NCBI GenBank assembly: GCA_977017575.1
Contig: CDRNVI010000041.1
Coordinates: 310,001-374,000 of the forward strand
DNA from: Paramoeba atlantica
Lineage: Eukaryota > Protista > Discosea
DNA length: 64,000 nucleotides
Direction of reading: 5' to 3'
Shown here piece by piece: positions 126 to 50,259 of the stretch (position 1 is the first letter of the stretch; every line of letters begins with the position of its first letter). The notes under the pieces were generated by a model that saw nothing but the letters and a program-made list of their open reading frames with translations, had not been told where the DNA came from and did not search any database. A program made the translations under genes and the position numbers.

Positions 126-366
126 GGATGCTGGTCGAGTCGACAGAGTCTATACTCACGCCTAGCCCGCGAGGGCTAGGTACCTCAAGTGAGGTAGTAC
201 ACGGGTAGTGAATCTCCTCCCCGTCGGCCAGCATCCTGTTTCGTGACCGTGTCGCTGCCGACACAGGCCCGCGCCTGCGCCCTCCCATATAACAAGGGGG
301 AAGGGTTTACAAGTCAGGCCGTGGAGAGGTCGAAAGACCCGGTCCGGAACGCTCGAATGGATTGGG
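126..366 (+). ncRNA. Conserved structured 3' UTR RNA module, copy 1
   Basis: Closing helix 126-138/224-236, CCTAGCCC-GCGA-GGGCTAGG hairpin, GTGTCG-CTGC-CGACAC hairpin, GGTC-GAAA-GACC hairpin; recurs downstream of divergent ORFs. Confidence 0.75.
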
Positions 367-504
367 AATGGATTGCTTGTTTTTATTGTTATTGTTTTTA
401 TTGTTCTTATACTTACGGGAGATCGAATTGCTAGTTTTGGGCTCCAAAATATGAAATTGCTAATTTGATTGCTTGTTTAAAAAGACAAAAAAAAAAAAAA
501 AAAA

Positions 505-542
505 AACTTTAACGATAAAGATACAGTTTCTGTACCTTGTTG
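505..542 (+). other. Spliced-leader (mini-exon) sequence, 5'-truncated, at the head of element A
   Basis: AACTTTAACGATAAAGATACAGTTTCTGTACCTTGTTG carries the kinetoplastid SL core ACAGTTTCTGTAC...TTG; not followed by a GT intron. Confidence 0.85.
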
Positions 543-592
543 AATTATTTTTCCTTTCTTTAGTTACTCCCCGGGGATTAGCGTCCTTCCCC

Positions 593-3500
593 ATGAAAAG
601 CGATCAAAGTCTTCGATCTCGCGCAAGCCTAGACAAAAATCCACCTTCACCCCACATATTGACTAACACAAACGAAGGTAAGCTCAGCGAAGGCACTTTC
701 ACCGATGAAGAGCGTTCCCACCGACTCGGCAGTTGGGACCAGTTTGAGGGGAACAAACACTTGATCTCCACTGCAAGTACATACAACGAGCAACTTTATA
801 CCACGCCGATCCCCATGGATATTCCCGCGGAATGGATGGATCACGCACGCCAAATTGCACAGGAGAGGGAAACTCCAGACACGGGCCATACTGAGGCAGA
901 AAACGAGGAAATGCAACACTGTGGGGTAAGACGGCAGAGCACAACTCATGAAAACGCACCTGCATCTCGGACCCCCGACAAAGCACTGAAGCTTAATGCC
1001 GTAGTACAGGACGTCTCTCCCCGTCTGCTACACAACGTTTCTCCCTCGAAAGGACCCACGAAGACAGACACGAGGCATTCTAAACGAATACCGGCGACAG
1101 AGAAAAACCCTCCCTCACCTCTCCTAGCTGAGGCCAAGGACTCAGCCACCGAAGTTACACAAAACAGAGAAGAATTCCGAGAATGCTCGGCGATGGGATG
1201 CACTTGGCGGAGCCCGGCGCACGGGGTATCGTGGCAAGCGTTTTATAACCACGTCGCCTGTCGCCACGGTAGCAGCATCCCTGCCGCCTGGTGGGCTACA
1301 GAAGGTAGATTCCTGTGTGCTGCATGCGGGCGCTCTTACGATGTCAATAAAACGGAAACACACCCACAGTCCTGAAAGGGAAAGATGACAACCCCTCAAA
1401 GCCCATCACACATGTCACACCCAAGCGACGAAAGCCACCCACCCACAACTCAGATGCATCAACCCGAGCTTCCCTCGTTGGCCTCTATTTCTCAGACACA
1501 ATTGAGCACTTGCAAAGACGTCCCCGCCCGATGCCGTCATCTTTGGGGAGAAATCTTAACAAAAACGGCCGAAAACGCAGTCAAGGAAAACTCCCCCGCC
1601 GCGTGGACGTTATTCGCTATGCTCCCGAAGTGTCTCCTACCAGCTCCGCACCGAGGAGGACGCAAGCATCACACAACATACGCATCATTCGTCGAAAAGT
1701 GCATGAACCGATGGCTGGCGCAAGATTACGTACCCTTGTGGAATGATACAGTAAACAACGCCCTCAAAAAGCAATCCGCAACCCCTAACATAGTTCACGA
1801 TGAGGAGGAAAAAGCTGCCATCCGGTCAGAATTGCTGGTTCGACAAGGCGAGTACTCAAGAGGAATGGCAGCACTCACGGCTGACCCAATGGCTCCTGAC
1901 GACGAAGAAACGTATATCAAGCTTCAGAACAAACACCCGTGCCGCCTTTCAGACAGCGACGCCATCGATTACACCCCCCCACCAACAGCGCCCTTACAGG
2001 TAGATGAAGCGACAGTCGCGAAAACCATCAAAAGCTTTCACCGAGGCTCCTCCGCCGGAACCATGGGCCTACGCCCAGAACACCTACAAGTGGCACTCCT
2101 AGCGCAGGTAGACAACACTACGAAACCTCTCAAAGCTATTACAAACCTCGTAAATCACCTTCTAGCCGGTAAAGCCCCTCTAGAGGTTCAACCGTATTTC
2201 GCCGGAGCCAGACTTTGCGCCTTAGAAAAGGGCGAAAACGACGTCCGACCCATAGCTGCGGGGGAAACTATTCGTCGATTGGTCAGCAAAACTGCGTGCA
2301 ACGTAGTTAAAGCCAAGGCAAGCGGCATATTCGCAGGGCTACAGTTCGGAGTGGCGACACCAGTCGGAGCTGAACGCATAATCCACACTTGTCGACAAGC
2401 CATGGCCATCCACACTGATAACCCTGACTTTGTTCTTTGCAAAGTAGACCTCAGAAACGCCTCTAACAACGTTAGCAGAACCGCCTTCCTGAAGCTTGTA
2501 AGCGAGCACTTCCCAGAATTATTCCCATGGGCAAGCTGGTGCTATACCACCACTAGTGCATTGACTTACCGAACCCACACGCTCCTATCGGACGAAGGTG
2601 TCCAACAAGGGGACCCCCTCGGACCTCTTTTCTTCTCCCTGGTCGCCCTGGAATTAGCAAACGAAATCAATCACCAGGCCGACTTGGACCTACAATTATG
2701 GTACCTTGACGACGGGGTTCTCATAGGCAAGGCCCAAGACACCAGAAATGCACTGGACACGATCGCCAGGGTAGGCCCTCGCTGGGGCTTGCACTTGAAC
2801 ATGTCGAAGTGTGAAATCATTACCTCCCCTGCCTCGGCTAACGTGACAAATTTGTTTCCCGACATACCGGACACCAAAATCAAAGTACGTGGCGACTTTA
2901 GCGTTCTAGGAAGTCCGATTGGATCCCCAGAGTATTGCTCCGAATACCTGACAACGCACGCCATTGAACCAGCAGAAACGGCGTTAGAAGCTATAACTAG
3001 AATCAAAGACCCACAGGTTTCAATGGCGCTTATTCGGCAATGCGCCGGGTTCTGCAAAATGGTCCACGCTCTCCGCACGACCCCACCACAATCACTTACA
3101 CTTTTATGCGAGCGTCTGGATGATTTTCTCATGCACGCGGTAGAGTCATGTTTATGCCCCTTGCCTCCCTCTGCACGGTCCCAAATTCAGCGCCTGAAAA
3201 AACACGGAGGATTCGGGTTACGGTCAGCATCCTTTCACGCAACCTCAGCCTACGTTTCCTCGGTTGCTTTTGCAGCAGACATGGACTCTTGGGATCCATC
3301 CGAAGTAGAAGGCTTTCTATCATCTATTGACGACATAAACGCGAAGGTTGGCACCAAGCTTCTCAACTCAAGTGGCCGTGTGTGCACTATCCCGCACCAC
3401 AAATGCGAAGAATTTCCTCCGAGGCATCGCCCCGCAAAGCGCCCACGCCAGCCGGATACCCATGATCCTACTTCATCTGCGAATCCCCCTTCCCTTCCAC

Positions 3501-4490: not shown

Positions 4491-4588
4491 CTTGGTAACG
4501 GAGTAAGTAGCCCTCGTGGGATAATCGTTTCCTAACCACACCGTTGTCGGCACAGGCCCACGTTAGCGCCCTCGGAAACAACTGATCT

Positions 4589-4830
4589 GGAAGCTGGTCG
4601 AGTCGACAGAGTCTATGCTCACGCCTAGCTCGCCGAGGGCTAGGTACCCCAAGTGAGGTAGTACACGGGTAGTGAATCTCCTCCCCGTCGACCAGCTTCC
4701 TGTTTCGCGACCGTGTCGCTGTCGACACAGGCCCGCGCCTGCGCCCTCCCATATAACAAGGGAAGGGTCCACAAGTCAGGCCGTGGTGAGGTCGAAAGAC
4801 CCGGTCCGGAACGCGCGGATGGATTGGGCG
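4589..4830 (+). ncRNA. Conserved 3' RNA module copy
   Basis: GGAAGCTGGTCGA (4589) pairs perfectly with TCGACCAGCTTCC (4688), a compensatory change relative to copy 1. Confidence 0.75.
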
Positions 4831-5059: not shown

Positions 5060-6595
5060 CGAACCCTGCCTCGGCACACCAAACTGCTCTTTTTTCCGAT
5101 ATTCCGGAACCCAAGATAAACCGCGAAGGAAATTTTGACATTCTTGGGAGCCCCATAGGCTCTGCTCAACATTGCATAGATTTCCTTACGACACACGCCG
5201 TGGAACCGGCAGAAGAGACCCTGGAAGCTATAGAAATGCTCGAAGATCCTCAAATTGCCTTGTCATTGATCAGAAAGTGTGCGGGTTTTTGTCAAATGGT
5301 CCATTCGCTTCGAACTACCCCACCACATGAGCTTTCTGCACTCTGTCAGCGCCTTGATGAAGCAGTCCTCCATGCGTATGAATGGAATATATGCCCGCTT
5401 AGCTCCTCAGCTCGATCACAAGTTCAACGCCCGAAACGGTATGGAGGTTTTGGTCTCCGATCTGCATCTGCGCACCGCTCAGCGGCGTACGTGTCTTCAG
5501 TTGCTTTTGCTGCAGAGACGGATCGTTGGCTACCGTCAGATGCAGAAGGATTCTCTTCCGCAGTCCTGGACATCAATCGCCGGAGCGGAGGCCCCGTAGT
5601 TGATCCGGACACGGGAAGAGCATTAGAGGAGATCAGCTCCCCTTTTCCGACAGGATCTAGTCAAAGTACAGAAACGGACAATTCTTGCACCCCCCGTCAA
5701 CGTGCCTTGAGCGACGCAATCTCGGCGCACGAATTTTCATGTGCGTACGCAGCGGCGGACAGTAGCACTCGCGCGAGGTACACCTCTCAGACTGGAGATG
5801 GGGCCAGCAGCACACGTGCTCCAAGGCGAATTTATCACCTTCACGTGAGGTAAGCCTGGGGAACCTAGGGCCTGGCGGCTGTCCCACGAGGCCGGGCGAT
5901 GTCTTTATTCCGGGCTATGAGAAAGCTCAAGGTCTGGTGCTTGATTTTGCTGTCACCCACGTTCAGCAACCTAAATACACGGACTTAGTCCGCAACGCTA
6001 ACGGGGTGGCGGCAGGATCATTTGCGGAGCACTACGCCGCTTCTCACAAGGTGAAAGAGAGAGAGGAGGCGGAACAAGCAAAACATGTGTTTGTTGCCAT
6101 GGTGGTAGAATCATATGGTGCTTGGAGTGCAAGTGCCCTATCAATCCTTAGATGGGTTTGGAAGCATCGCGCCTCATGTTCCCAGGGGACTCTATCTCAA
6201 GAAGCAGCTACCCGTCAGCTGCTTCAAGAGCTTAACCTCACCCTGATGCGTTCTCAATCGAGAATGCTTGTCTCACGCATGCCGGCTGAAGATCCACAAC
6301 CGGCACTTATTTTGCAGTAGCCTAAACCAAGGCTCGCGGATACCGGCATGTTCGAAGGCTGAGGGTGCTGGTCTCGTCGACAGAGTCTATACTCACGCCT
6401 AGTCCGTCAGGGCTAGGTACCCCAAGTGAGGTAGTACACGGGTAGTGAATCTCCTCCCCGTCGGCCCGCATCCTGTTTCGCGACCGTGTCGCTGTCGACA
6501 CAGGCCCGCGCCTGCGCCCTCCCGTATAACAAGGGAAGGGTCCACAAGTCAGGCCGTGGAGAGGTCGAAAGACCCGGTCCGGAACGCGCGAATGG
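5060..6595 (+). mobile_element. 5'-truncated family C fragment with an internal deletion of about 230 bp
   Basis: Near-identical to 48253-50014; deletion junction at about 5811 causes a frameshift; includes a 3' module at 6362-6595. Confidence 0.9.
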
Positions 6596-6875
6596 TTGAG
6601 GAGTCGCCTGCAGGCCGGGTGAGGCGAAGCTGAGGGAGACCTTACCCCCCTGAAAAGTTGAAAAGTTGGGTAGGGGAAAGCAGGAAAGTAGGGAGAAAGG
6701 TGGGAAAAGTATGTCAAGAGGTGAGAAAGAGGAGAAAGAGAGAGAAAAATTTTCTTTATTTGCATAAAAACAATATAAAAAAAAAAAAAAACTTCAATTT
6801 GCGCCGTATGCTCAATGGAGGCTTTTTCAAATAAATTCGGATTTCTCGAGAGTTTGACAAAAAAAAAAAAAAAAA
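6596..6875 (+). repeat. Purine-rich 3' tail (type P1) + poly(A) + 68-nt segment + poly(A)
   Basis: The same tail recurs at 11341-11537, 21766-22036 and 50015-50182. Confidence 0.75.
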
Positions 6876-9900: not shown

Positions 9901-11056
9901 TGGGGCCCGACGCCAGGCGCAACGTGAAAACCGGTACGGGGGGTTGGGGCTCCGGTCAGCGGAGGAACACGCGAGTTCCGCCTACGTAGCCTCCGTCGCT
10001 TTTGCATCAAACAAAGACCGGTGGGACCCAGAGGACGCTGAGGGGTTCACCCAAGCTGTTCGGGAGGTCAACAAACGCACCGGGACGGCAGTCATCGAAC
10101 AGTGCGGATTAATATCAAAAAGCCTCGCATTGTCGATGACCACGCTTAACTCGAATAACGATGCACAAGAACCTAGCACAGAGCTGGTAATTCCTCGCCA
10201 ACGCGATCTGAGTCATGCCATCGCTTCCTACGAATTTCGGGAGTCGTTTGCTCGTGCCGACCTTCGAACGAGGGCCAGATGGACATCGGAAACGGGAGAA
10301 GGGGCCTCGGAGTGGGCTTTCGTAATCCCCTCCAAGAAAAGCGGCTTAGCCTACACACCGACTGAATTCCGTACTCTTGTGCGTTGGTGGCTCGGGGATA
10401 CTATTTACCCAGCTTTCCGGCCCTGTCCTCTGGAGAAATGCTCGTTGCCGCTTGACCCCGAGGGTGACCACGCACTGGTATGCAAGTGCGGGCACGGCAT
10501 AATCGCACGGCACAACGCCATTGCGGGACAGTTCACAACAGAGTGTGCCAAAGCCGGGTTTACCCCACGGCGAGAAGTGAGTCTGGGGAATACGGGCCCC
10601 GGAGGCACCCTCACCAGGCCAGCGGACGTATTTCTTTCCACATTCGACGTAGGCCAGTCTCTCGTATTAGACTTCGCTGTCACTCACGTCCAGCAGCCAA
10701 AGTATACGGACTTAGTCCGTGACGCTAACTGGGTGGCAGCGGGGTCTTTCGCGGAGCGCTACGCGACGGAAAACAAAAAGAAACAAAGAGAGGAAGCAGA
10801 AGCCGCACGCCACAGGTTTAGTGCTATGGTGGTGGAGACCTACGGGGCATGGAGTCCCAGTGCCTTCGCCATTCTCAAGGAGGTAGCTGCTTCACGGTAA
10901 GCGTACTCCGGGGGACTCTCGAAGGGTGAAGCCCTTCATCAACTGGTGACAACGCTGAACGTCGCCCTCATGAGGACACAAGCTCGTATGCTTGTACTGC
11001 GCCTCCCCGCAGCCTCCCCCGATATCTGTGTTAATGGGTACGGGAACGAAGAGTAG
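6938..11056 (+). pseudogene. CRE-like family B polyprotein (LsmAD-like, C2H2/CCHC fingers, RT, REL) with two in-frame stops
   Basis: One frame throughout with TAG at 7682-7684 and TAA at 10898-10900 (TCA in the copy at about 52277); RT and REL motifs otherwise intact. Confidence 0.9.
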
Positions 11057-11537
11057 TCTTAGTGGAACCCGCGGCTTTTCTTGGGAGTTTTCTTGGGTGG
11101 GGGGCCCTTTTCTATGATGGGGGGATGTGGCCAGCGTCCGGATTTCCTGCGGATTTTAAGGTACGGGGTTGGCGTTTTGAAGGGAGGTAGGGGTTTGCTA
11201 GTTTTTGGTTTGCTAGTTTCGGGATTAAGACTTTTGGATACGTAATTGGACAGTTGTAACAAATGCAAAACACATTGCTATCAAAAAAAAAATGTAAACT
11301 TGAGAAAGTAATTTCGATTCCGTCAAAAAAAAAAAAAAAAGTGAGGCGAAGCTGAGGGAGACCTTACCCCCCATGAAAAGTTGAAAAGTTGGGTAGGGGA
11401 AAGCAGGAAAGTAGGGAGAAAGGTGGGAAAAGTATGTCAAGAGGTGAGAAAGAGGAGAAAGAGAGAGAAAAATTTTCTTTATTTGCATAAAAACAATATA
11501 AAATTGCTAATTTAAAAAAAAAAAAAAAAAAAAAAAA

Positions 11538-14073
11538 CCGAGAGTATTCTCACTTACGGTTTCCGTCAGATTTCTTCAAAGGAGGGTGTGCAACAAGGGG
11601 ATCCGTTGGGTCCTTTACTTTTTTCCCTCGTCATGCAACTGGTTACTACCGAGATAGATCGACAACTTCCTGGTCTTCTTAAGCTTAATCTGTGGTATTT
11701 GGATGACGGCATTCTCGGGGGGAAGGCTCAAGACGTCAGACGAGCTTTAGACATCATCGAACGAGTCGGCCCACAGTGGGGCATCTTCCTAAACGCCAAC
11801 AAGTGCGAGGCGATCACACATCCTGAATCCGCCGAACACCTGGACAGCTTCGGCAACATCCCGACGACTAAAAAGACAAGCGAGGGAAATTTTTCAATTT
11901 TAGGTAGCCCTGTAGGAACGACTGATTTCTGCACAGAATTTCTCCGTGAACACACCCTGTTGCCTGCTGAAGAATCCCTAGCCGCGATCGAATACATGGA
12001 AGACCCGCAAGTTTCCCTCGCACTCATCCGACAGTGTGCTGGTTTCAGCCAAATGGCATATTCTCTTAGAACCACACCCACCAATTCCGTCCATGAGTTA
12101 TGCGAAGAACTTGACACAGCAATACTACATACCACGGAACGCTCTATATGCCCTTTAAATGAAGATGCTGCCGCACAAGTACAACGTCCAAAATCTTACG
12201 GTGGATTCGGGCTGCGCTCTTCAGCGATGCATGCCTCATCGGCGTACGTTTCCTCAGTCTCTTTCGCAGCGGATAAGGACAACTGGAACTCCCTCGACGC
12301 AAAAGATTTTGCTGATGCAGTACTGGACGTCAATTCACGAGCGGGCACCAGCGTCCTGGAAGAGAAAACCGGTCTAATTTCCCCTCAGCACGCTTCCTCT
12401 CTCTCTCACCTCAAAAAAGTACTGGGTCTCCGTGGATCAAAACGACCTCTCCCGGCGAATCTTCCCGTAGCACCACCCGGAGACACGACGACCCCTTACT
12501 TTGAACAAACGAAACTCGACCACGAGTTTTCATCTTCCAACGACCGAGTCGCACGCCAAAAGGTGCTCAGCCGTGCAATTTCTTCCCGCGAGTACACCGA
12601 TGCATATCAGAAAGCTGATCCTCAAACGAGGGCACGTTGGATATCTCAATCTGGAAAAGGGGCAGGTGACTGGCTGTTTGTCACGCCCTCCAGGGAAAAG
12701 GGGCACGCCTTTACTAAAACGGAGTTCCGCACCCTGTGCACCTGGTGGCTAGGACAAAAAGTATATCCAGAAACACACCCCTGTCCCGTCTCAGGCTGCA
12801 CGCTTCCGATGGGACCACAAGGAGACCACGCATTGGTCTGTAAACACGACTACGGGATCTCTGCGAGGCATAATGCCTTGGCCCTCCAGTTCTTTGACGT
12901 TTGTCAAAAGGCCAATTTGTCTCCGAAAAGGGAGCACAGCCTCGGCAACAGAGGTCCAGGGGGGGCACTCACAAGACCAGGGGATGTGTTCCTTCCGAGC
13001 TACACGCTCGGTAAAGGCCTTGTCTTTGATTTTGCGGTGACCCACGTCCAGCAACAGAAATATACGGACCTGGTCCGTTCTGCTGGCATGGTAGCTGCAG
13101 GGGCCTTCGCAGAGAAATATGCAACGAACCACAAGCGTGGACAAAGGCAAGAGGCTATAGAGGCCGGACATGATTTCACCGCCATGGTAGTGGAATCGTA
13201 CGGATCATGGAGCCCGACGTCCCTCCATATGCTGAAGAAGATCGCGGGAAAAAGAGCCGCAGCATGTAAGGGTGATATGTCCGAGCAAGCGTCAATGTTT
13301 TTTCTTCTCCAGGACATGAACGTTACGCTCATGCGGTCTCAGGCACGAATGCTTGTAAGACGCATGGCAGACGTGGATATCCATGCCAGTCTCGCTTTAC
13401 TGAACGAGGCACCCTCTGACACCACACCAAATCGTGCCAGCTGCGGACCGGCAGGAGCGATCGAGCCTACAGTGCCTATTCTCACGCCTCGCCTTCTTGA
13501 GTGAGGTACCCCAAGGTGAGATAGGTAGGGATTCGGACTGACAGTCCTATTTCAGCACGAAGACGCCATGGTATCCAGGACGGGTGCTGGTCGGGTCGAC
13601 AGAGTCTATACTCACGCCTAGCCCGCGAGGGCTAGGTACCCCAAGTGAGGTAGTACACGGGTAGTGAATCTCCTCCCCGTCGGCCAGCATCCTGTTTCGT
13701 GACCGTGTCGCTGTCGACACAGGCCCGCGCCTGCGCCCTCCCGTATAGCAAGGGAAGGGTTCACAAGTCAGGCCGTGGAGAGGTCGAAAGACCAGGTCCG
13801 GAACGCGCGAATGGATTGGGCATGGATTGCTTGCTTTAATTTTTACTGTTTTTCTTGTTTGTAGTATATACTTAGGGGAGACTAAATTGCTAGTTTTGGG
13901 CTGAGAAAAAAGGTACATCTGTGGACAGAAAAAGAATTGCTAATTTGATTGTTTGTTTTCAACTCGTATACCCCCCCCAATGGACCTACTTGGTTCGTCT
14001 ACTGGGTCAAAATATAGAGGCAATGCCGCGATTCATACTTCTCCCCCCTTATTAATTGCAAAAAAAAAAAAAA
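11538..14073 (+). mobile_element. 5'-truncated CRE-like family D element
   Basis: Open frame to 13504 with QQGDPLGPLLF, WYLDDG, RHN, TRPGDV, FDFAVTH; 3' module at about 13582-13825; poly(A) 14058-14073. Confidence 0.9.
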
Positions 14074-14107
14074 AACTGTTGTCAAAAAAAAAAAAAAAAA
14101 AAAAAAA

Positions 14108-14428
14108 CACGGGTAGTGAATCTCCTCCCCGTCGGCCAGCATCCTGTTTCGCGACCGTGTCGCTGTCGACACAGGCCCGCGCCTGCGCCCTCCCATATAG
14201 CAAGGGAAGGGTTCACAAGTCAGGCCGTGGAGTGGTCGAAAGACGCGGTCCGGAACGCGCGAATGGATTGGGTCTGTATTGCTTGTTTTAGTTTTTACTG
14301 TTTCTTGTTTGTAGTATATACTTAGGGGAGATTAAATTGCTAGTTTTGGGCTGAGAAAAAACAAAAGGTACATCTGTGGAAACAAAAAGAATTGCTAATT
14401 TGATTGCTTGTTTTCAAAAAAAAAAAAT
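14108..14428 (+). mobile_element. Isolated 3'-end fragment (half of the 3' module + tail + poly(A))
   Basis: Starts at CACGGGTAGTG after poly(A); near-identical to 24985-25290. Confidence 0.8.
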
Positions 14429-17462: not shown

Positions 17463-19464
17463 CGAACCCTGCCTCGGCACACCAAACTGCTCTTTTTTCC
17501 GATATTCCGGAACCCAAGATAAACCGCGAAGGAAATTTTGACATTCTTGGGAGCCCCATAGGCTCTGCTCAACATTGCATAGATTTCCTTACGACACACG
17601 CCGTGGAACCGGCAGAAGAGACCCTGGAAGCTATAGAAATGCTCGAAGATCCTCAAATTGCCTTGTCATTGATCAGAAAGTGTGCGGGTTTTTGTCAAAT
17701 GGTCCATTCGCTTCGAACTACCACACCACATGAGCTTTCTGCACTCTGTCAGCGCCTTGATGAAGCAGTCCTCCATGCGTATGAATGGAATATATGCCCG
17801 CTTAGCTCCTCAGCTCGATCACAAGTTCAACGCCCGAAACGGTATGGAGGTTTTGGTCTCCGATCTGCATCTGCGCACCGCTCAGCGGCGTACGTGTCTT
17901 CAGTTGCTTTTGCTGCAGAGACGGATCGTTGGCTACCGTCAGATGCAGAAGGATTATCTTCCGCAGTCCTGGACATCAATCACCGGAGCGGAGGACCCGT
18001 AGTTGATCCGGACACGGGAAGAGCATTAGAGGAGATCAGCTCCCCTTTTCCGACAGGATCTAGTCAAAGTACAGAAACGGACAATTCTTGCACCCCCCGT
18101 CAACGTGCCTTGAGCGACGCAATCTCGGCGCACGAATTTTCATGTGCGTACGCAGCGGCGGACAGTAGCACTCGCACGAGGTACACCTCTCAGACTGGAG
18201 ATGGGGCCAGCAGCTGGGCATTTTGCATCCCATCAACTGAGCTTGGCCACGCTTACACACCCACAGAATTCCGCGCCCTCTCCAGGTGGTGGTTAGGTGC
18301 CAAGGTCTACAACGAGTTGAGCACGTGCCCAATTAACACATGCCAACAACCTCTCGACCTCGAAGGAAACCATGCAGTGTCTTGCAAAAGTGGGAATGGA
18401 CTGATCTCCCGCCACAATGCGCTCATTACACAATTCACCGACACGTGCTCCAAGGCGAATTTATCACCTTCACGTGAGGTAAGCCTGGGGAACCTAGGGC
18501 CTGGCGGCTGTCCCACGAGTCCGGGCGATGTCTTTATTCCGGGCTATGAGAAAGCTCAAGGTCTGGTGCTTGATTTTGCTGTCACCCACGTTCAGCAACC
18601 TAAATACACGGACTTAGTCCGCAACGCTAACGGGGTGGCGGCAGGATCATTTGCGGAGCACTACGCCGCTTCTCACAAGGTGAAAGAGAGAGAGGAGGCG
18701 GAACAAGCAAAACATGTGTTTGTTGCCATGGTGGTAGAATCATATGGTGCTTGGAGTGCAAGTGCCCTATCAATCCTTAGATGGGTTGGGAAGCATCGCG
18801 CCTCATGTTCCCAGGGGACTCTATCTCAAGAAGCAGCTACCCGTCAGCTGCTTCAAGAGCTTAACCTCACCCTGATGCGTTCTCAATCGAGAATGCTTGT
18901 CTCACGCATGCCGGCTGAAGATCCACAACCGGCACTTATTTTGCAGTAGCCTAAACCAAGGCTCGCGGATACCGGCATGTTCGAAGGCTGAGGGTGCTGG
19001 TCTCGTCGACAGAGTCTATACTCACGCCTAGTCCGTCAGGGCTAGGTACCCCAAGTGAGGTAGTACACGGGTAGTGAATCTCCTCCCCGTCGGCCCGCAT
19101 CCTGTTTCGCGACCTTGTCGCTGTCGACACAGGCCCGCGCCTGCGCCCTCCCGTATAACAAGGGAAGGGTCCACAAGTCAGGCCGTGGAGAGGTCGAAAG
19201 ACCCGGTCCGGAACGCGCGGATGGATTGGGCGTGGATTGCTTCCTTTTTTATTATTATTGTTATCAGAATCATAAATAACTTAAGGCAGGTTGAATTACT
19301 AGTTTTGGGCTACAACATGTGAAATTGCTAATTTGATTGCTTGTTTACAAATCATATACCCCCCCCAATGGACCTTCATGGTTCATGTATTGGGTAATAT
19401 AGAGGCAATGCCGCGTTTCATACTTCTCCCCCCTTATTAATCGCATAAAAAAAAAAAAAAAAAA
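17463..19464 (+). mobile_element. 5'-truncated family C copy, tandem unit 1
   Basis: Starts at CGAACCC after poly(A); open frame to 18949; 3' module at about 18990-19230; poly(A) 19447-19464. Confidence 0.9.
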
Positions 19465-21465
19465 CGAACCCTGCCTCGGCACACCAAACTGCTCTTTTTT
19501 CCGATATTCCGGAACCCAAGATAAACCGCGAAGGAAATTTTGACATTCTTGGGAGCCCCATAGGCTCTGCTCAACATTGCATAGATTTCCTTACGACACA
19601 CGCCGTGGAACCGGCAGAAGAGACCCTGGAAGATATAGAAATGCTCGAAGATCCTCAAATTGCCTTGTCATTGATCAGAAAGTGTGCGGGTTTTTGTCAA
19701 ATGGTCCATTCGCTTCGAACTACCCCACCACATGAGCTTTCTGCACTCTGTCAGCGCCTTGATGAAGCAGTCCTCCATGCGTATGAATGGAATATATGCC
19801 CGCTTAGCTCCTCAGCTCGATCACAAGTTCAACGCCCGAAACGGTATGGAGGTTTTGGTCTCCGATCTGCATCTGCGCACCGCTCAGCGGCGTACGTGTC
19901 TTCAGTTGCTTTTGCTGCAGAGACGGATCGTTGGCTACCGTCAGATGCAGAAGGATTCTCTTCCGCAGTCCTGGACATCAATCACCGGAGCGGAGGCCCC
20001 GTAGTTGATCCGGACACGGGAAGAGCATTAGAGGAGATCAGCTCCCCTTTTCCGACAGGATCTAGTCAAAGTACAGAAACGGACAATTCTTGCACCCCCC
20101 GACAACGTGCCTTGAGCGACGCAATCTCGGCGCACGAATTTTCATGTGCGTACGCAGCGGCGGACAGTAGCACTCGCGCGAGGTACACCTCTCAGACTGG
20201 AGATGGGGCCAGCAGCTGGGCATTTTGCATCACATCAACTGAGCTTGGCCACGCTTACACACCCACAGAATTCCGCGCCCTCTCCAGGTGGTGGTTAGGT
20301 GCCAAGGTCTACAACGAGTTGAGCACGTGCCCAATTAACACATGCCAACAACCTCTCGACCTCGAAGGAAACCATGCAGTGTCTTGCAAAAGTGGGAATG
20401 GACTGATCTCCCGCCACAATGCGCTCATTACACAATTCACCGACACGTGCTCCAAGGCGAATTTATCACCTTCACGTGAGGTAAGACTGGGGAACCTAGG
20501 GCCTGGCGGCTGTCCCACGAGTCCGGGCGATGTCTTTATTCCGGGCTATGAGAAAGCTCAAGGTCTGGTGCTTGATTTTGCTGTCACCCACGTTCAGCAA
20601 CCTAAATACACGGACTTAGTCCGCAACGCTAACGGGGTGGCGGCAGGATCATTTGCGGAGCACTACGCCGCTTCTCACAAGGTGAAAGAGAGAGAGGAGG
20701 CGGAACAAGCAAAACATGTGTTTGTTGCCATGGTGGTAGAATCATATGGTGCTTGGAGTGCAAGTGCCCTATCAATCCTTAGATGGGTTGGGAAGCATCG
20801 CGCCTCATGTTCCCAGGGGACTCTATCTCAAGAAGCAGCTACCCGTCAGCTGCTTCAAGAGCTTAACCTCACCCTGATGCGTTCTCAATCGAGAATGCTT
20901 GTCTCACGCATGCCAGCTGAAGATCCACAACAGGCACTTATTTTGCAGTAGCCTAAACCAAGGCTCGCGGATACCGGCATGTTCGAAGGCTGAGGGTGCT
21001 GGTCTCGTCGACAGAGTCTATACTCACGCCTAGTCCGTCAGGGCTAGGTACCCCAAGTGAGGTAGTACACGGGTAGTGAATCTCCTCCCCGTCGGCCCGC
21101 ATCCTGTTTCGCGACCGTGTCGCTGTCGACACAGGCCCGCGCCTGCGCCCTCCCGTATAACAAGGGAAGGGTCCACAAGTCAGGCCGTGGAGAGGTCGAA
21201 AGACCCGGTCCGGAACGCGCGGATGGATTGGGCGTGGATTGCTTCCTTTTTTATTATTATTGTTATCAGAATCATAAATAACTTAAGGCAGGTTGAATTA
21301 CTAGTTTTGGGCTACAACATGTGAAATTGCTAATTTGATTGCTTGTTTACAAATCATATACCCCCCCCAATGGACCTTCATGGTTCATGTATTGGGTAAT
21401 ATAGAGGCAATGCCGCGTTTCATACTTCTCCCCCCTTATTAATCGCATAAAAAAAAAAAAAAAAA
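19465..21465 (+). mobile_element. 5'-truncated family C copy, tandem unit 2
   Basis: Period of about 2 kb with a few SNPs relative to unit 1; open frame to 20951; 3' module at about 20992-21235. Confidence 0.9.
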
Positions 21466-22436: not shown

Positions 22437-25410
22437 ACCTCCCCTGGAAGAAGAAGCTTTAAAACTGGACGAATCCGAGGTAAGAAAAGCAGTAGATACC
22501 TTCCGTCGCGGATCCTCTGCTGGGACTATGGGGCTCCGGCCTGAACACCTCCAAACAGCGCTTCAAGAGCACGTCGACCAGAATATGAATCCTCTTACGA
22601 CGCTCACTTCCTTCGTAAACCATCTCCTAGCTGGCAAAGCCCCAGACGAAGTGCAACCTTTTTTTGCAGGGGCACGGCTATGCGCACTCGAAAAAGGGGA
22701 AGATGACGTGCGTCCTATCGCTGCGGGGGAAACCCTTAGACGTCTGGTGAGCAAGGCAGTGTGCCTTTCGATAAAAGAAAAAGCAGGATCCTTCTTTGGA
22801 CGTCGTCAATACGGGGTCGCAGCGTCTGCTGGGGCGGAAAGAGTGATACACCTTTGTCGCCGTCTAATGAGAAATAATGAAGAAAATGAGAACATAACGT
22901 TCTGTAAGGTGGATCGTAAGGTGGATCTTCGGAACGCCTTTAATAACGTGAGCCAACCCGTCTTCATCTTTCTCACACGAAAGCATTTCCCTGAACTATC
23001 CCCATGGGTAGAATGGTGTTATGCCAATCACAGCTGTCTCACATTCGGCAATGATTTTATCCCCTCGGCAGAAGGAGTGCAACAAGGAGACCCTCTGGGC
23101 CCACTCCTCTTCTCCTTGGTGTTAGCAGAGGTAACAGAAGAAATTGCATCAAATTCTAACCTACGAACACAATTATGGTATTTAGATGACGGTGTGCTTG
23201 TAGGTGAGCCCAAAGAAGTCCGTAAAGCCCTAGACGTCCTCGACGAGATAGGGCCGAAGTGGGGACTCTTCCTGAATCTCTCCAAGTGCGAGGTCATTAC
23301 CCCCCCAGCATCAGCTCATACCTCCGTTTTCTTTCCTGACATCCCCAGCGATAAAATACGGTACGACGGGAACTTCGACATTCTTGGAAGCCCAATAGGC
23401 TCTGCGGAACACTGTGCGGAGTTTCTCATGACACACGCGATTGAACCAGCCCGCGAAACATTAGAAGCTACTGCTGTGTTAGAAGATCCCCAAATAGCTC
23501 TCGCACTAATACGGCAATGTTCGGGGTTTTGTCAGATGGTGTACGCACTGCGCACCACTCCTCCCCAAGCCCTTGGAGAATTATGCCAAAAACTTGACTC
23601 TCATCTAGTCCAGGCCGTGGAGCACGCAATTTCTCCCTTAGGCGTCGCCGCTCGCGACCAAATACAACGACCAAAACGCCACGGCGGGTTCGGACTTCGC
23701 TCATCAATTCTCCACCAGTCAGCAGCCTACGTTTCTTCCGTCGCGCACGCCGCTAGCTTGGACAACTGGGACCCCACAGAAGCTGAGGGATTTTCCAGCT
23801 CAGCACATGACATAAATGACAAAGTTGGGACTGATCTGGTTGATCCATACACTGGACGCATTACCAAACCTAGTGTGCCTGGTGAATATCATGCAAATCG
23901 GAGCATCCTTTCCCGCCCAGCGAAAAGAAAACTCGCACAATCCCTCAATCACGCCCTTCTCCCGGTCTCGACGGATCAGGAAAAGATCATCCCGAGGCAA
24001 AAACATCTCAGCCAAGCTATCTCGGATAGGGAATTTCAAACGGCATATTCAAAGGCAGACGCAAGAACGCGGGCGCGATGGATCTCGCAGTCCGGAAAAG
24101 GGGCCGGAAACTGGGCTTTCGCAACTCCCTCCAAGACCAGAGGCTACGCTTTCACCCACACGGAGTTTCGTACCCTAACACGCTGGTGGCTAGGCATGGA
24201 CGTCTTCCCCGAAGATCGGCCTTGCCCAGCTGACGGGTGCACCCTTCCCTTGCTCAAGAATGGAGAGCACGCTTTGCTCTGCAAGAACGGCCATGGTATC
24301 ATCTCACGGCACAACGCTCTGGCCCAACAATTTACATCGTTCTGCAGCAGTGCCTTCCTGGCGCCACAGAGAGAGAAGAGTTTGGGAAATCGGGGTCCTG
24401 GGGGGGCTCTCACGAGACCAGCAGACGTATTTCTGCCAACTGCCTCCATCGCCAAAGGATCTTTAGCGCAAGGCATGGTCCTAGATTTTGCGGTCACTCA
24501 CGCACAGCAAACAAAGTATTTGGACTCAGTCCACAATGCTAGCTGGGTGACCCCGGGGTCTTTTGCCGAGCACTTCGCGGAGACCAAGGCGCGACAGCGA
24601 CAAGAAGCAGAAAAAGCAGGACACCTCTTCACAGCGATGGTGGTGGAATCCTTTGGTTCCTGGAGCGAGAGTGCGCTAGCGTTACTCCGGGACATCGGAA
24701 CCCAACGGGCGAATGCATCCAAAGGGCTCCTTTCACGAGACCAAGCGCGAAACGATCTCCTAACAGATCTGAACGTGACGCTAATGCGTTCTCAAGCCAG
24801 GATGATGGTTTCGCGCATCCGCGTAGAGGACCCAGCGGATCCTTTGGTAGAGGCTTAAGCCTCTACTGACAGTCCTATTTCAGCACGAAGACGCCATGGT
24901 ATCCAGGACGGGTGCTGGTCGGGTCGACAGAGTCTATGCTCACGCCTAGCCCGCGAGGGCTAGGTACCCCAAGTGAGGTAGTACACGGGTAGTGAATCTC
25001 CTCCCCGTCGACCAGCATCCTGTTTCGCGACCGTGTCGCTGTCGACACAGGCCCGCGCCTGCGCCCTCCCACATAACAAGGGAAGGGTTCACAAGTCAGG
25101 CCGTGGAGTGGTCGAAAGACCCGGTCCGGAACGCGCGAATGGATTGGGTCTGTATTGCTTGTTTTAGTTTTTACTGTTTCTTGTTTGTAGTATATACTTA
25201 GGGGAGATTAAATTGCTAGTTTTGGGCTGAGAAAAAACAAAAGGTACATCTGTGGAAACAAAAAGAATTGCTAATTTGATTGCTTGTTTTCAACTCGTAT
25301 ACCCCCCCCAATGGACCTACTTGGTTCGTCTACTGGGTCAAAATATAGAGGCAATGCCGCGATTCATACTTCTCCCCCCTTATTAACTGCAAAAAAAAAA
25401 AAAAAAAAAA
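22437..25410 (+). mobile_element. 5'-truncated CRE-like family F element
   Basis: Open frame to 24858 with full RT and REL motifs; in-frame 12-nt duplication (KVDRKVDL); 3' module at about 24910-25145; poly(A) 25391-25410. Confidence 0.9.
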
Positions 25411-25412
25411 GA

Positions 25413-25454
25413 AACTAACTTTAACGATAAAGATACAGTTTCTGTACCTTGTTG
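25413..25454 (+). other. Complete 42-nt SL exon at the head of element E
   Basis: AACTAACTTTAACGATAAAGATACAGTTTCTGTACCTTGTTG begins with the canonical AACTAAC; no upstream SL-gene sequence and no intron. Confidence 0.88.
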
Positions 25455-25498
25455 ACTTATTTTAATTATCCCACTTTTTTCCCTGGGAGGGTATAACC

Positions 25499-28400: not shown

Positions 28401-29077
28401 TATCACGCTGGTGGCTAGGCTCCGATATTTACCAACAAGATCGACCTTGTCCCGCAAAAGGATGCGCATCACCCTTGCAGAGAGATGGGGAACATGCCTT
28501 GCTATGCAAGAACGGACACGGCCTCATCACCAGGCATAACGCGGTGTGCGAACAATTCGCCTCATTTTGCAGGAAAGCCGACATGGCACCACAAAGGGAA
28601 AAAATCCTGGGAAACAGGGGACCTGGAGGGGGTCTCACCAGGCCCGCCGACGTGTTCATACCCAACTTCACCCTGGGAAATGGTATGGTGTTAGACTTCG
28701 CAGTCACCCACGCACAGCAACTAAAGTATTTGGACTCCGTCCGAAATGCTAGCTGGGTGGCTGCGGGGTCTTTCGCTGAACATTACTCAACAACGAAGAA
28801 TACCCAACGTCAGGAAGCGGAAAAGGAAAACTTACTCTTCACCGCCATGGTGGTTGAGTCCTTTGGGTCGTGGAGCAAAAGTGCTCTAGCAGTCTTGTGG
28901 AAGGTGGGGGCGCTACGCGCCAGTGCGTCTAATGGTCTTCTTACTGACACACAGGCTCGAAATGAACTCTTAAAAGAGTTGAACGTGACGCTCATGCGCT
29001 CACAGGCCCGAATGATGGTCTCCAGGTTGGTCGTAAGTGACCCCAGCGCCCCCTTGGAAGGGGCCTCACTCTCATGA
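25499..29077 (+). CDS. Intact CRE-like retrotransposon polyprotein, family E (1192 aa): LsmAD-like, zinc fingers, RT, REL
   Basis: ATG 45 nt after the SL; CPAEGC...HVAHRH finger; CKDC...H...C; RT motifs KVDLRNAFN, QQGDPLGPLLF, WYLDDG; C-terminal C..GC...H...C, RHN, RPADV, LDFAVTH. Confidence 0.93.
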   Translation: MPQDDLFDANTLPMDDDSFRQEENSHNTGDWDQFAGNAHLISGQSSYNELLYTTPIPKNIPKHWAERAAKFAGENPTPDTGRVTDNEETNHSRVVDASAGIPPEVSGAKISSPNKRKNANPLPSLQHSPQRVCPAEGCSWKTPPHGGQWQAYYNHVAHRHGESVPTDWWEGEGRFLCKDCGRHYDKNKEKAHPKHCKGCDHHVRSPTPPRPTTRPRNAEDVPPENLLPTLSSVCALPISKCKDVPHSCRFLWASILTQAFTTAVQENTVEAWTLLAMLPKCVLPAPYRGGRKGHMSYSTHVEKNMELWLAGEYLLLWEQALKDHGKKRSKPRNTESEEDRAAIRAELLARQGEYSRGMAALTAAPMAPDNEETLAKLLEKHPEPPENPLENNIPPIEGNPLRLEEVEVRKAIDSFHRGSSAGTMGLRPEHIQSAILEHVDKNVNPLSALTRLANHMLRGKAPPEVQLFYAGARLCALEKGEGDVRPIAAGETLRRLISKAACIAVKEKAGTLFRGQQYGVAASAGAERVIHLCRKTMLNNLGSDSFVICKVDLRNAFNNVSRPVFTLLTRMNFPELSPWVEWCYKSPSCLTYGNHFLSSAEGVQQGDPLGPLLFSLVLSEITTEISSRSNLDSQLWYLDDGVLMGEAAEVRKALNVLSEFGPRCGLFFNPTKCEIITPPPSAHLTTLFPEIPTAKSRVDGNFDILGSPIGSSEHCAEFLMSHAIDPARETLAAIGLIKDPQVAIALIRQCTGFCQMVYALRTTPPQALSQLCSILDENVLTAVEWALFPLEPHARDQIQRRKRHGGFGLRSSTLHASAAYVSSVAHAADMDDWDPTEADGFTASVKDVNSKAGVSLVDPITGRTPKQNKSHHDSGQRHNFLSKRKRPRCTLNKMEADRATEPEMVIPRQQQLSQAISQQEFTTAYGQADPRTRARWVSQSGKGAGSWAFVTPSRNKGYAFTPTEFRTLSRWWLGSDIYQQDRPCPAKGCASPLQRDGEHALLCKNGHGLITRHNAVCEQFASFCRKADMAPQREKILGNRGPGGGLTRPADVFIPNFTLGNGMVLDFAVTHAQQLKYLDSVRNASWVAAGSFAEHYSTTKNTQRQEAEKENLLFTAMVVESFGSWSKSALAVLWKVGALRASASNGLLTDTQARNELLKELNVTLMRSQARMMVSRLVVSDPSAPLEGASLS

Positions 29078-29099
29078 GTGAGGTTCTCCAATGTGAGCC

Positions 29100-29340
29100 C
29101 GGATGCTGGTCGTGTCGACAGAGTCTATACTCACGCCTAGCTCGCGAGGGCTAGGTACCCCAAGTGAGGTATTACACGGGCAGTGAATCTCCTCCCCGTC
29201 GGCCAGCATCCTGTTTCGCGACCGTGTCGCTGTCGACACAGGCCCGCGCCTGCGCCCTCCCACATAACAAGGGAAGGGTTCACAAGTCAGGCCGTGGAAA
29301 GGTCGAAAGACCCGGTCCGAAGCGCGCGAATGGATTGGGC
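29100..29340 (+). ncRNA. Conserved 3' RNA module copy (family E)
   Basis: Same helices; CCTAGCTC-GCGA-GGGCTAGG with a G-U substitution; poly(A) 29536-29556. Confidence 0.75.
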
Positions 29341-29610
29341 ATGGATTGCTTGCTTTAATTTTTACTGTTTCTTGTTTGTAGTATATACTTAGGGGAGAGT
29401 AAATCGCTAGTTTTGGGCTGAGAAAAAAAGAAAAAGAAAATATACTTCTGTGGAAATAAAAAGAATTGCTAATTTGATTGCTTGTTTTAAATTCATATAC
29501 CCCCCTAATGGACCTACTATGTACTTGGTTCGTCTAAAAAAAAAAAAAAAAAAAAAGAGCGGACGGGGTCCTGGGGTATGGAGGTTGTCCCTATAATTTT
29601 GGAAGGTTAT

Positions 29611-29890
29611 GGATGTTAATCGGTTAACAGGCTTTATTCTCACGCCTTGTTTCCTTTTCGGAAGCAAGGTTCCCCAATGTGAGGTAAATATGAGTAAAGG
29701 TTTCCTTTATTCTACGATTAACGCCTTAATGTTTTTTAACCGCGTCACTGTTGACACGGCCGTACACCACGCCTAGTTGCTCCACACTTCTAGGTCCCAA
29801 GTTGGTGCATGGGCAGAGGTTGAAAGCGTAACCTGTGTAGCTCGTGTGAGCTTGTAAAGGGCGTGGCAGTGGACTGGTCATCTATTGCTA
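29611..29890 (+). ncRNA. Divergent homolog of the 3' RNA module (clade-2 G-type UTR)
   Basis: Colinear motifs TATTCTCACGCCTTG...CAAGGTTCCCCAATGTGAGGTA, GTCACTGTTGAC and AGAGGTTGAAA, with compensatory changes. Confidence 0.7.
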
Positions 29891-30460
29891 TCGTTATCCT
29901 TGTACGAGTTCTGTAAGTGAGGTTTGATTATGATTTCTTTTCTATATATGATTTACTATGTGTCCGGGCATTTTTATACAGGTTTTATTTTGTGTGACGT
30001 GTGTGCGGGCAGGTTGGTCGAGGGTTCCGGTGGGGGGAACCACGTTAACAGAGTGACAGTGACATATATGTTTGCAGGCCTAAAATTGTCGTGAGAACAT
30101 ATTATTTACAGTTTAATGTTGATGTTATGTTTTGAGATTGGGAAATAGGGCTTGTGAGCAATCAGATACATTTTAGTTGTTTCTTTGTTTACTATTCGAT
30201 ACATGTTATTTATTGAGGGAGATACGGAGTATCTAACTCGCTTACTAAGGTTAATTCCAAAACATGAAAATGCCCATCAAAGAAGCGAGAGATCGAGTTT
30301 TTTCAAAATTTTAAAACGTAGCAGTACCTCACTAGATGAACTCTTTAATACTCGAAAAATCATCTACAACGACCTCATTTCCCAAATTGTAGAACACTTT
30401 TGGTAAAAAACAGTGCGTCTGCAAAGGTCTGCGATACGACAAACTGGTTGACTAAGGAGA

Positions 30461-38762: not shown

Positions 38763-38887
38763 ATGTAGTCGGTTTTCGCGACTCTCCGACAGCACTCCCA
38801 TCTTATGCCTTTTACTTTACGACCTGTGCCTCCGAAATGTGGTCGTTCTGGGGTTTGGAGGTTGTCCCTATAATTTTGGAAGGTTAT

Positions 38888-39170
38888 GGGTGTTAATCGG
38901 TTAACAGCTCTTTATTCTCACTCCTTGTTTTTTCGGAAGCAAGGTTCCCCAATGTGAGGTAGGGATGAGTAAAGGTTTCCTTTGCACTACGGTTAGCGCC
39001 TTAATGTTTTTAGCCGCGTCACTGTTGACACGGCCCTACGCATCACGCCTAGTTGCTCCACACTTCTAGGTACACAAGTTGGTCTAGGGCAGAGGATAAA
39101 AACGTAACCTGCGTAGCTCGTGTGAGCTTGTAAAGGGCGTGGCAGTGGACTGGTCATCTATTGCTATCGT
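38888..39170 (+). ncRNA. G-type homolog of the 3' RNA module in the family G 3' UTR
   Basis: GGGTGTTAATCG (38888) pairs with CGGTTAGCGCCT (38990) using G-U pairs; same internal motifs as 29611. Confidence 0.7.
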
Positions 39171-49779: not shown

Positions 49780-50014
49780 GAGGGTGCTGGTCTCGTCGAC
49801 AGAGTCTATACTCACGCCTAGTCCGTCAGGGCTAGGTACCCCAAGTGAGGTAGTACACGGGTAGTGAATCTCCTCCCCGTCGGCCCGCATCCTGTTTCGC
49901 GACCGTGTCGCTGTCGACACAGGCCCGCGCCTGCGCCCTCCCGTATAACAAGGGAAGGGTCCACAAGTCAGGCCGTGGAGAGGTCGAAAGACCCGGTCCG
50001 GAACGCGCGAATGG
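49780..50014 (+). ncRNA. Conserved 3' RNA module copy (family C), joined to a P1 tail
   Basis: Same junction (CGAATGG|TTGAGG) as at 6595. Confidence 0.75.
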
Positions 50015-50259
50015 TTGAGGAGCCGCCTGCAGGCCGGGTGAGGCGAAGCTGAGGGAGACCTTACCCCCGCCCCCTGAAAAGTTGAAAAGTTGGGTAGGGG
50101 AAAGCAGGAAAGTAGGGAGAAAGGTGGGAAAAGTATGTCAAGAGGTGAGAAAGAGGAGGAAAAAAAAAAAAAAAAAAAAAATTTCGGAGATCGAATTGCT
50201 AGTTTTGGGCTCCAAAATATGAAATTGCTAAAAAAAAAAAAAAAAAAAAAAATGTGCAT

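What the first reader, a model, noticed from the sequence alone, without database searches (positions are those of the whole stretch)
126..366. An unrecognised ~240-nt structured RNA shared by the 3' ends of divergent retrotransposon families
Seen: ORFs A, C, D, E, F and the edge element are visibly divergent in protein sequence, yet all are followed by a near-identical module (126, 4589, 6362, 13582, 14108 partial, 18990, 20992, 24910, 29100, 49780). The variation preserves pairing. The closing helix is GGATGCTGGTCGA/TCGGCCAGCATCC, GGAAGCTGGTCGA/TCGACCAGCTTCC or GGGTGCTGGTCGG/TCGACCAGCATCC. The hairpin CCTAGCCC-GCGA-GGGCTAGG tolerates only G-U swaps or a bulge, and there is a GAAA tetraloop. 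I do not recognise it as an rRNA, snRNA or known ribozyme. Inference: an RT-binding/TPRT signal, a catalytic RNA, or a promoter/processing signal for the next element in the array, as with the HeT-A 3' promoter.
Basis: partly seen in the sequence, partly recalled or inferred. Interest (0 to 1): 0.9.

Follow-up and report, generated by a model that had tools for sequence, protein, structure and literature searches.

The report
Shared folded RNA tail of jumping genes
A 240-letter folded RNA follows the coding part of several only distantly related jumping-gene families in this protist, and it spread between them by swapping. It is probably the handle by which the elements' RNA is recognised for copying, but that is untested.

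Summary
Window 126-366 is one of nine full copies and one 5'-truncated copy, all on the + strand. Each starts 24-100 nt after the stop codon of a reverse-transcriptase ORF with a restriction-like endonuclease motif.

- **Conservation:** the ORFs are 50-68% identical in protein and 64-73% in patchy DNA matches. The module is 93-96% identical. The genome holds about 600 or more copies.
- **Known families:** there is no Rfam match and no tRNA.
- **Structure:** near-identical copies show almost no covariation. Diverged variants do, supporting two domains (P1-P4, P5-P8) and an 8-bp long-range pairing that crosses P1. These variants are an 82% type, the G-type in a tyrosine-recombinase retroelement, and a P2/P3 core in the second LINE clade. 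Over 79 pairs, 95% are paired against 34-44% in slid controls, and 24 pairs change on both sides against 4-8.
- **Evolution:** the near-identity is horizontal. A family 75% identical to family A in protein carries the 82% type, while 50%-identical families share the canonical module. Families A, C and F keep decayed older modules just upstream, and tails switch at the 3' edge.
- **Function:** most likely an R2-like protein-recognition element in the 3' UTR (0.45). A host-factor element is the main rival. Neither a ribozyme nor a promoter gets support.

Earlier notes of this scan had already flagged the G-type copy and the pseudoknot idea.

The parts
126..366 (+). Canonical 3' module, copy at the window edge (domain D1 126-236, domain D2 238-350, small terminal hairpin to 366)
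126..236 (+). D1. P1 closing helix 126-137/225-236. Single-stranded X segment 139-146. P2 and its extension 148-159/189-200. P3 hairpin 160-168/173-181, followed by the conserved unpaired ACC(C/T)CAA. P4 202-211/215-223
   Evidence: P1 has 7 pairs changed on both sides, P3 has 4 (four pair types at one position), P4 has 2
238..350 (+). D2. P5 238-248/341-350. P6 hairpin 249-254/259-264. P7 long imperfect hairpin 269-286/298-324. P8 GAAA hairpin 328-331/336-339
   Evidence: P5, P6 and P8 each show compensatory changes. P7 aligns poorly in the G-type
139..262 (+). Long-range 8-bp pairing of X (139-146) with Z (255-262, the P6 loop plus its 3' strand). It crosses P1, so it is a pseudoknot, and it excludes P6
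   Evidence: 98% paired, 3 pairs changed on both sides, one of them in the P6 loop; duplex -11.7 versus hairpin -6.2 kcal/mol
367..506 (+). Variable tail and poly(A), followed at 507 by a copied spliced-leader exon of the next element
4589..4828 (+). Canonical module, family A
6363..6601 (+). Canonical module, family D, beta tail
13582..13820 (+). Canonical module, family C
14107..14272 (+). 5'-truncated module starting at module position 74, directly after a poly(A)
18992..19230 (+). Canonical module, family D, alpha-prime tail
20994..21232 (+). Canonical module, family D, alpha-prime tail
24910..25148 (+). Canonical module, family E. It shares a further 45 nt upstream with family C
29101..29339 (+). 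Canonical module, family F
49782..50020 (+). Canonical module, family D, beta tail
13453..13553 (+). Decayed older D1-like module of family C. It overlaps the ORF end, and the stop codon at 13502-13504 lies inside its P3
   Evidence: (35 bits)
29063..29097 (+). Decayed older P2/P3 core of family F. It overlaps the ORF end (stop at 29075-29077) and ends 3 nt before the canonical module
4549..4588 (+). Remnant of an older D2 (P6 3' strand and P7 5' strand, like the 82% type) just upstream of the family A module. The same remnant lies at 88-125 in the edge element
29609..29880 (+). Diverged G-type module, part of the 3' non-coding region of a tyrosine-recombinase retroelement
   Evidence: (88 bits)
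38886..39160 (+). Second G-type module, at a junction with a clade-2 LINE copy that is unique in the genome (junction at about 38846)

Best explanation
The stretch is the sense-strand 3' UTR RNA module of spliced-leader-associated LINEs that carry a restriction-like endonuclease. It folds into two domains tied together by a long-range pairing. Most likely it is the cis-acting handle by which the element's own protein recognises its RNA for target-primed reverse transcription, as the R2 3' UTR element does. That protein would be the RT or its RNP. The most conserved part is the P2/P3 hairpin with its unpaired CCCCAA bulge, and this is the likeliest contact. The near-identity across families is not ancient conservation. 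One module version spread horizontally among families by template switching or ectopic recombination at its edges, was stacked downstream of older modules, and replaced them. Shown: the copies, the fold, the covariation, the position and the horizontal history. Inferred: the protein partner and the role in reverse transcription.
For: - **Position:** the module starts 24-100 nt after the stop of an RT ORF. That ORF ends in a CCHC motif plus a PD..D..K endonuclease motif, and its nearest solved relatives are R2 proteins.
- **Structure under selection:** 95.4% of pair cells are paired against 34-44% in slid controls. 24 pairs change on both sides against 4-8. D1 alone across five module types gives 87.8% against 36-52%. 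The long-range helix is 98% paired with 3 covarying pairs.
- **Core in both LINE clades:** the P2/P3 core occurs in clade 1 and clade 2, whose RTs are about 25% identical.
- **Horizontal spread:**
  - The sister family of A is 75% identical to A in protein but carries the 82% module. A, C, D, E and F share the 93-96% module.
  - Older module remnants lie upstream of the canonical module in A, C and F.
  - E shares 45 extra upstream nucleotides with C.
  - D copies 99% identical in ORF and module carry two different tails.
Against: - No binding or retrotransposition data exist, and no RNA reads were available.
- The module lies 100-330 nt from a poly(A) whose site varies. R2 and stringent-type signals sit at the very 3' end.
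- Family B, with two 99%-identical copies, has no module detectable with the D1 model.
- A structurally conserved version sits in a tyrosine-recombinase retroelement, which does not use TPRT. That fits a general host factor better than a LINE RT.
Confidence: 0.45

Rival explanations
1. It is a portable post-transcriptional element that recruits a host protein for RNA stability, export, translation or escape from silencing. It would work like retroviral CTE/RTE elements and would be useful to any retroelement RNA.
For: A diverged version with the same structure is kept in the 3' non-coding region of an unrelated class of element with Gag knuckle, tyrosine recombinase and RT-RNase H. It also lies after the last ORF there. 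The module moves freely between families. Its distance from the poly(A) is variable.
Against: All these mRNAs are already capped by the spliced leader and polyadenylated, so the need for such an element is unclear. Family B does without it. No host gene copy was seen, although this was not searched exhaustively.
Confidence: 0.28
2. It is an RNA-RNA interaction device. The X segment keeps a 6-nt self-complementary sequence in every type, and the X/Z versus P6 alternative could act as a switch or a dimerisation site. Either would bring two element RNAs together and promote the template switching that shuffles modules.
For: X, the P6 5' strand and Z covary three ways. The self-complementary hexamer is kept through two independent double changes: GTCGAC, GCCGGC and GTTAAC. 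The mosaic history is shown.
Against: The self-complementarity partly follows from the X/Z pairing itself. D1-only modules keep an X-like segment without any Z. LINE RNA dimerisation has no precedent that I know of.
Confidence: 0.08
3. It has no function of its own. The sequence is similar because it was copied recently, and it is homogenised by gene conversion inside the arrays.
For: Canonical copies differ by only 4-7% and show one compensatory pair. The arrays are dense and tandemly duplicated.
Against: Variants 18-40% diverged keep the helices through many double changes. The identity boundary is sharp at P1 in all families. Older modules decay once a new one is present, which implies that one intact module is what selection keeps.
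Confidence: 0.08
4. It is a self-cleaving ribozyme or another RNA-processing signal.
For: It has a compact pseudoknotted fold. Other elements of this genome are headed by twister ribozymes according to earlier notes, and trypanosomatid Pr77 is an HDV-like ribozyme (PMC5814959).
Against: No ribozyme family matches, even at E up to 10. 5'-truncated copies start at scattered positions: 30, 67, 74, 74, 90 and 99 inside the module, and 6-94 nt upstream of it. Full elements retain the module joined to the ORF.
Confidence: 0.04
5. It is a DNA-level promoter for the next element in the array, as in HeT-A.
For: The arrays are head to tail.
Against: Selection preserves sense-strand RNA pairs, including many G-U pairs that would be C-A mismatches on the other strand. 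The distance to the next element varies and includes a poly(A). The next element starts with a copied leader exon not followed by a GT splice donor, which an earlier follow-up reads as copying from leader-bearing RNA.
Confidence: 0.03

Closest known systems
R2 3' UTR RNA element, the TPRT initiation signal of R2 retrotransposons
   Same: A structured RNA of a few hundred nucleotides that lies directly after the RT ORF of a non-LTR element with a restriction-like endonuclease. Some R2 elements have a pseudoknotted version that is necessary and sufficient for TPRT (PMC12222951).
   Different: No match to any Rfam model. It lies 100-330 nt upstream of a poly(A) instead of abutting the target. It is shared almost unchanged by families only 50% identical in protein, and a version occurs in a tyrosine-recombinase element. 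Binding is untested.
Stringent-type LINE 3' tails (eel UnaL2, zebrafish ZfL2) shared with partner SINEs
   Same: A 3' RNA structure recognised by the LINE protein and shared between different elements (PMC1636434, PMC4176376).
   Different: Those are short stem-loops at the extreme 3' end, next to short repeats. This one is a 240-nt two-domain fold placed internally. No SINE-like partner was found in the loci examined.
Pr77 hallmark of trypanosomatid retroposons (L1Tc, NARTc, ingi, SIDER, DIRE)
   Same: A conserved module shared by different retroelement families in a related group of protists. L1Tc RT readily switches templates (PMC5814959).
   Different: Pr77 is the first 77 nt at the 5' end and acts as a promoter and an HDV-like ribozyme. 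This module is 3', 240 nt long, and shows no sign of cleavage.
Retroviral and retroelement transport elements (MPMV CTE, IAP RTE). This comparison is from my own knowledge
   Same: A portable structured RNA placed between the last ORF and the 3' end, found in unrelated retroelements.
   Different: Those bind known host export factors. No partner is known here, and the host mRNAs are trans-spliced.

Membership tests
R2-type 3' UTR TPRT signal | Lies in the 3' UTR directly after the RT ORF of an RLE-type non-LTR element | tested here: met
   The module starts 24-100 nt after the stop codon. CCHC plus PD..D..K motifs at the ORF end. Best PDB hits are R2 proteins.
R2-type 3' UTR TPRT signal | Sequence and structure match to the curated R2 RNA element model in Rfam | tested here: not met
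   No Rfam hit at gathering score in the whole window. No relevant hit at E up to 10.
R2-type 3' UTR TPRT signal | Sits at the very 3' end, next to target-derived sequence | tested here: not met
   A variable tail of 100-330 nt and a poly(A) follow it.
R2-type 3' UTR TPRT signal | Bound by the element's RT and required for TPRT | not testable with these tools
   Needs protein-RNA binding and TPRT assays.
Stringent-type LINE 3' tail | Short stem-loop at the extreme 3' end, followed by short tandem repeats | tested here: not met
   It is a 240-nt two-domain fold, internal to the 3' UTR.
Stringent-type LINE 3' tail | The same tail is carried by a non-autonomous partner (SINE) | tested here: inconclusive
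   The short module-bearing units examined are 5'-truncated LINE copies. The genome was not searched exhaustively.
Self-cleaving ribozymes (HDV-like, hammerhead, twister, pistol, hatchet) | Match to a known catalytic core | tested here: not met
Self-cleaving ribozymes (HDV-like, hammerhead, twister, pistol, hatchet) | Copies or transcripts end at one defined cleavage site | tested here: not met
   Truncation points are scattered. The sample is small: 13 ends.
Pr77-type hallmark | First 77 nt of the element, with promoter and HDV-like ribozyme activity | tested here: not met
   The module is in the 3' UTR. Pr77 features are taken from PMC5814959.
HeT-A-type 3' promoter | DNA in the 3' end drives transcription of the downstream element | not testable with these tools
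   Sense-strand G-U covariation points to selection at the RNA level. Promoter activity itself was not tested.
CTE/RTE-like host-factor element | Portable between unrelated retroelements and placed after the last ORF | tested here: met
   The G-type follows the RT-RNase H ORF of an element with a Gag knuckle and an HxxR..Y recombinase ORF.
CTE/RTE-like host-factor element | Binds a host export or stability factor | not testable with these tools
   Needs a pull-down or a reporter assay.

The most novel reading that the evidence does not exclude
The module is a portable pseudoknotted RNA cassette that passes between LINE families and a tyrosine-recombinase retroelement. It works through a conformational switch or RNA-RNA pairing (X/Z against P6, with a self-complementary hexamer). 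It would either license any retroelement RNA via a shared factor or pair two RNAs and so drive the template switching that spreads it. In that case the RNA is itself a selfish, horizontally moving unit inside transposons.
Probability: 0.22. Interest if true: 0.8.

Novelty: new variant of a known kind. Interest (0 to 1): 0.6.

Why it matters
Structured 3' UTR signals are the key to how site-specific LINEs choose their template, and they are now used to engineer R2-based gene insertion. This is an undescribed RNA family with hundreds of copies and natural variants that map its helices. It also leaves an unusually clear record of module capture, with stacking, decay of the old module and mosaic tails, across LINE families and into another class of retroelement. 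If the partner protein is found, it would show whether template recognition in the spliced-leader-targeting LINEs works as in R2. It would also explain why one RNA version swept through competing families.

Tried and rejected
- **Rfam:** gathering scores over the whole window and E-value mode on 1-600 and 29540-29920 gave nothing relevant. ARAGORN found no tRNA-like gene.
- **Metagenome scan:** a search for the P2/P3 core pattern gave 0 hits. No relatives outside this genome were found, so all covariation comes from within one genome.
- **RNA evidence:** no run on record as RNA holds the element. The one possible transcriptome (X4, contigs only) covers only the leader sequence. Expression, ends and processing could therefore not be tested, and this is no evidence of silence.
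- **SINE-like partner:** the short repeated units on C83 (1122 nt) are identical 5'-truncated family C copies.
- **'LINE-owned G-type module' at 38886:** rejected. Other copies of that LINE diverge exactly at 38847 and carry their own D1-like core there, so the window copy is a unique junction.
- **Weak model hits at 57404 and 58656:** these are generic long palindromic hairpins that score on both strands.
- **An error of mine:** model R1 was built with P2 and P3 one column out of register. Its first pair count is therefore meaningless for those helices. I recounted with the correct structure. R1 hits and their bit scores rest mainly on sequence, P1 and P4.
- **Enforcing the long-range helix in a nested fold:** uninformative, because the helix crosses P1.
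- **The recombinase:** Pfam and PDB sequence searches did not detect it. The assignment rests on motifs read by eye.

Full report
**What is there**

Window 126-366 is one copy of a roughly 240-nt module. It recurs nine times in full and once 5'-truncated, always on the + strand. The window is G000:C41:310001-374000 of a 45.7-Mb protist genome. A first look finds 594 candidate copies genome-wide. A D1 model returns 150 hits, its scoring limit, all above 117 bits. In DNA read sets the module bins are roughly 100-700 times deeper than the family F ORF bins.

Each copy starts 24-100 nt after the stop of an RT ORF. It is followed by a variable tail of 100-330 nt, a poly(A), and then the copied spliced-leader exon of the next element.

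The ORFs carry RVT_1 and end in a CCHC motif plus an RPxDV..LDFAVTH..K endonuclease motif. Their best solved relatives are R2 proteins. They are therefore LINEs with a restriction-like endonuclease, of the R2/CRE/NeSL kind.

**How unusual the conservation is**

- The clade-1 families are 50-57% identical in protein, or 68% for E versus F.
- The 1.5 kb upstream of the modules gives only patchy 64-73% DNA matches between families.
- The modules themselves are 93-96% identical.
- Identity begins sharply at the first base of helix P1.

**Not a known RNA**

Rfam 15 gives no hit at gathering score in the window and nothing relevant at E up to 10. ARAGORN finds nothing.

**Structure**

The sense strand folds at -111.2 kcal/mol, z = -4.6. 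Among the canonical copies there is one compensatory pair and otherwise wobble changes, so these copies cannot prove a fold. Diverged relatives can:

- an 82% type with many copies;
- the G-type at 29609 and 38886;
- a D1-only core in a clade-2 LINE;
- decayed cores in families C and F.

On a 38-sequence MAFFT alignment I tested a model drawn on the first copy (P1-P4 in domain 1, P5-P8 in domain 2). It has 95.4% of cells paired against 34-44% when partners are slid. 24 pairs change on both sides against 4-8. Domain 1 across five module types gives 87.8% against 36-52%. One P3 position shows four pair types. P2 (CTCAC/GTGAG) is invariant, and its low score in G rows is a one-base alignment offset. 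The many G-U pairs tie the structure to the sense RNA.

**A long-range pairing**

The unpaired segment X (139-146) is complementary to Z (255-262), which is the loop and 3' strand of hairpin P6.

- The pairing is kept in 98% of cells.
- Three pairs change on both sides, in three lineages. One of them is in the P6 loop, which P6 itself cannot explain.
- X lies inside P1 and Z outside it, so this is a pseudoknot. It excludes P6, which also covaries.
- The X/Z duplex is more stable than the P6 hairpin in every type.

The module is therefore either a pseudoknot or a two-state switch.

**The near-identity is horizontal**

- The 82% type belongs to a family whose RT is 75% identical to family A. Yet A shares the canonical module with families only 50% identical to it.
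- Family C has a decayed D1-like module overlapping its stop codon, directly upstream of the canonical one. Family F has a decayed P2/P3 core in the same position.
- The A lineage keeps fragments of an older D2.
- Family E shares 45 extra upstream nucleotides with C.
- Family D copies that are 99% identical in ORF and module carry two unrelated tails.

New modules were therefore added downstream of old ones, and breakpoints cluster at the module edges. Template switching of the RT, or ectopic recombination in the arrays, would both do this. I cannot tell them apart.

**Beyond LINEs**

Most G-type copies follow an A-rich tract after an RT-RNase H ORF. That element also has a Gag-like zinc-knuckle ORF and an ORF with HSIKRG..LLRY recombinase motifs. 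This agrees with the earlier follow-up on this window.

The 38886 copy looked LINE-owned, because the ORF before it is the C-terminus of a clade-2 LINE. However, all other copies of that LINE diverge exactly there and carry their own D1-like core. The window copy is therefore a unique junction at a module edge.

**What it does**

By position, element type and the R2 precedent (PMC12222951), the best reading is a protein-recognition element for the elements' own RT or RNP, with the invariant P2/P3 bulge as the likely contact.

Four things count against that reading:

- the distance from the poly(A) is variable;
- the poly(A) sites are heterogeneous;
- family B lacks the module;
- a version is kept in a recombinase element, which favours a host-factor element.

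A ribozyme is unsupported: no model matches, and copy ends are scattered. A promoter is unsupported, because selection acts at the RNA level. No RNA reads were available, and no relatives were found outside this genome.

**Verdict**

The feature is real and abundant, and it is a new RNA family. It is best filed as a new variant of the structured 3' UTR signals of RLE LINEs. Its added interest lies in its pseudoknot or switch and in its record of capture between families and element classes.

Noticed in passing
window 13499-13506 and 29073-29083: In families C and F the RT ORF's stop codon lies inside the P3 hairpin of the decayed older core. A terminating ribosome would therefore sit on that structure.
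   Followed up: partly
window 10900-11340 and 51882-52778: Family B, with two copies 99% identical in protein, has a different 3' UTR. No module is detectable there with the D1 model.
   Followed up: partly
window 38846: A junction unique in the genome: a clade-2 LINE copy is joined to the G segment exactly where its sister copies start their own D1-like core. It may be a module swap caught in one copy, or a deletion.
   Followed up: yes
L061:2002-2110 (G000:C83:422665-422773), and L062-L065: A clade-2 LINE family carries a D1-only version of the module (P2/P3 core, 37-43 bits). It is followed by three repeats of about 18-21 nt and has no D2.
   Followed up: partly
G000:C83:390071-392426; G000:C21:716-9954; G000:C22:137885-151688: Tandem arrays with periods of 1122 nt and about 2283 nt, made of identical 5'-truncated element copies. 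This looks like amplification after insertion.
   Followed up: partly
window 367-506, compared with L002:1740-1948 and window 25149-25410: Copies with the same tail type end in poly(A) at different points. This fits heterogeneous host polyadenylation of the source RNA.
   Followed up: no
window 473-1375: The ORF1 of the element after the first module matches the LsmAD (ataxin-2/PBP1) domain just below Pfam's cut-off (23.7 bits against 25).
   Followed up: no
L032:1395-1452 (also L038, L039): The recombinase retroelement has an internal A-rich tract between its RT-RNase H ORF and the G segment. LINE insertions appear to land in it, which would explain why G fragments start right after LINE poly(A) tails (window 29557, L041).
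   Followed up: partly
L032:1910-2131 and 2336-2557: A 222-nt direct repeat lies in the 3' non-coding region of the recombinase retroelement, downstream of the G-type module.
   Followed up: no
window 57404-57474 and 58656-58726: Two roughly 70-nt near-perfect palindromic hairpins lie in the region after the clade-2 ORF at 52896-57017.
   Followed up: no
window 25419-25463: The only part of the stretch covered by the possible transcriptome run X4 is the spliced-leader sequence, at high depth on contigs that continue into unrelated sequence.
   Followed up: no
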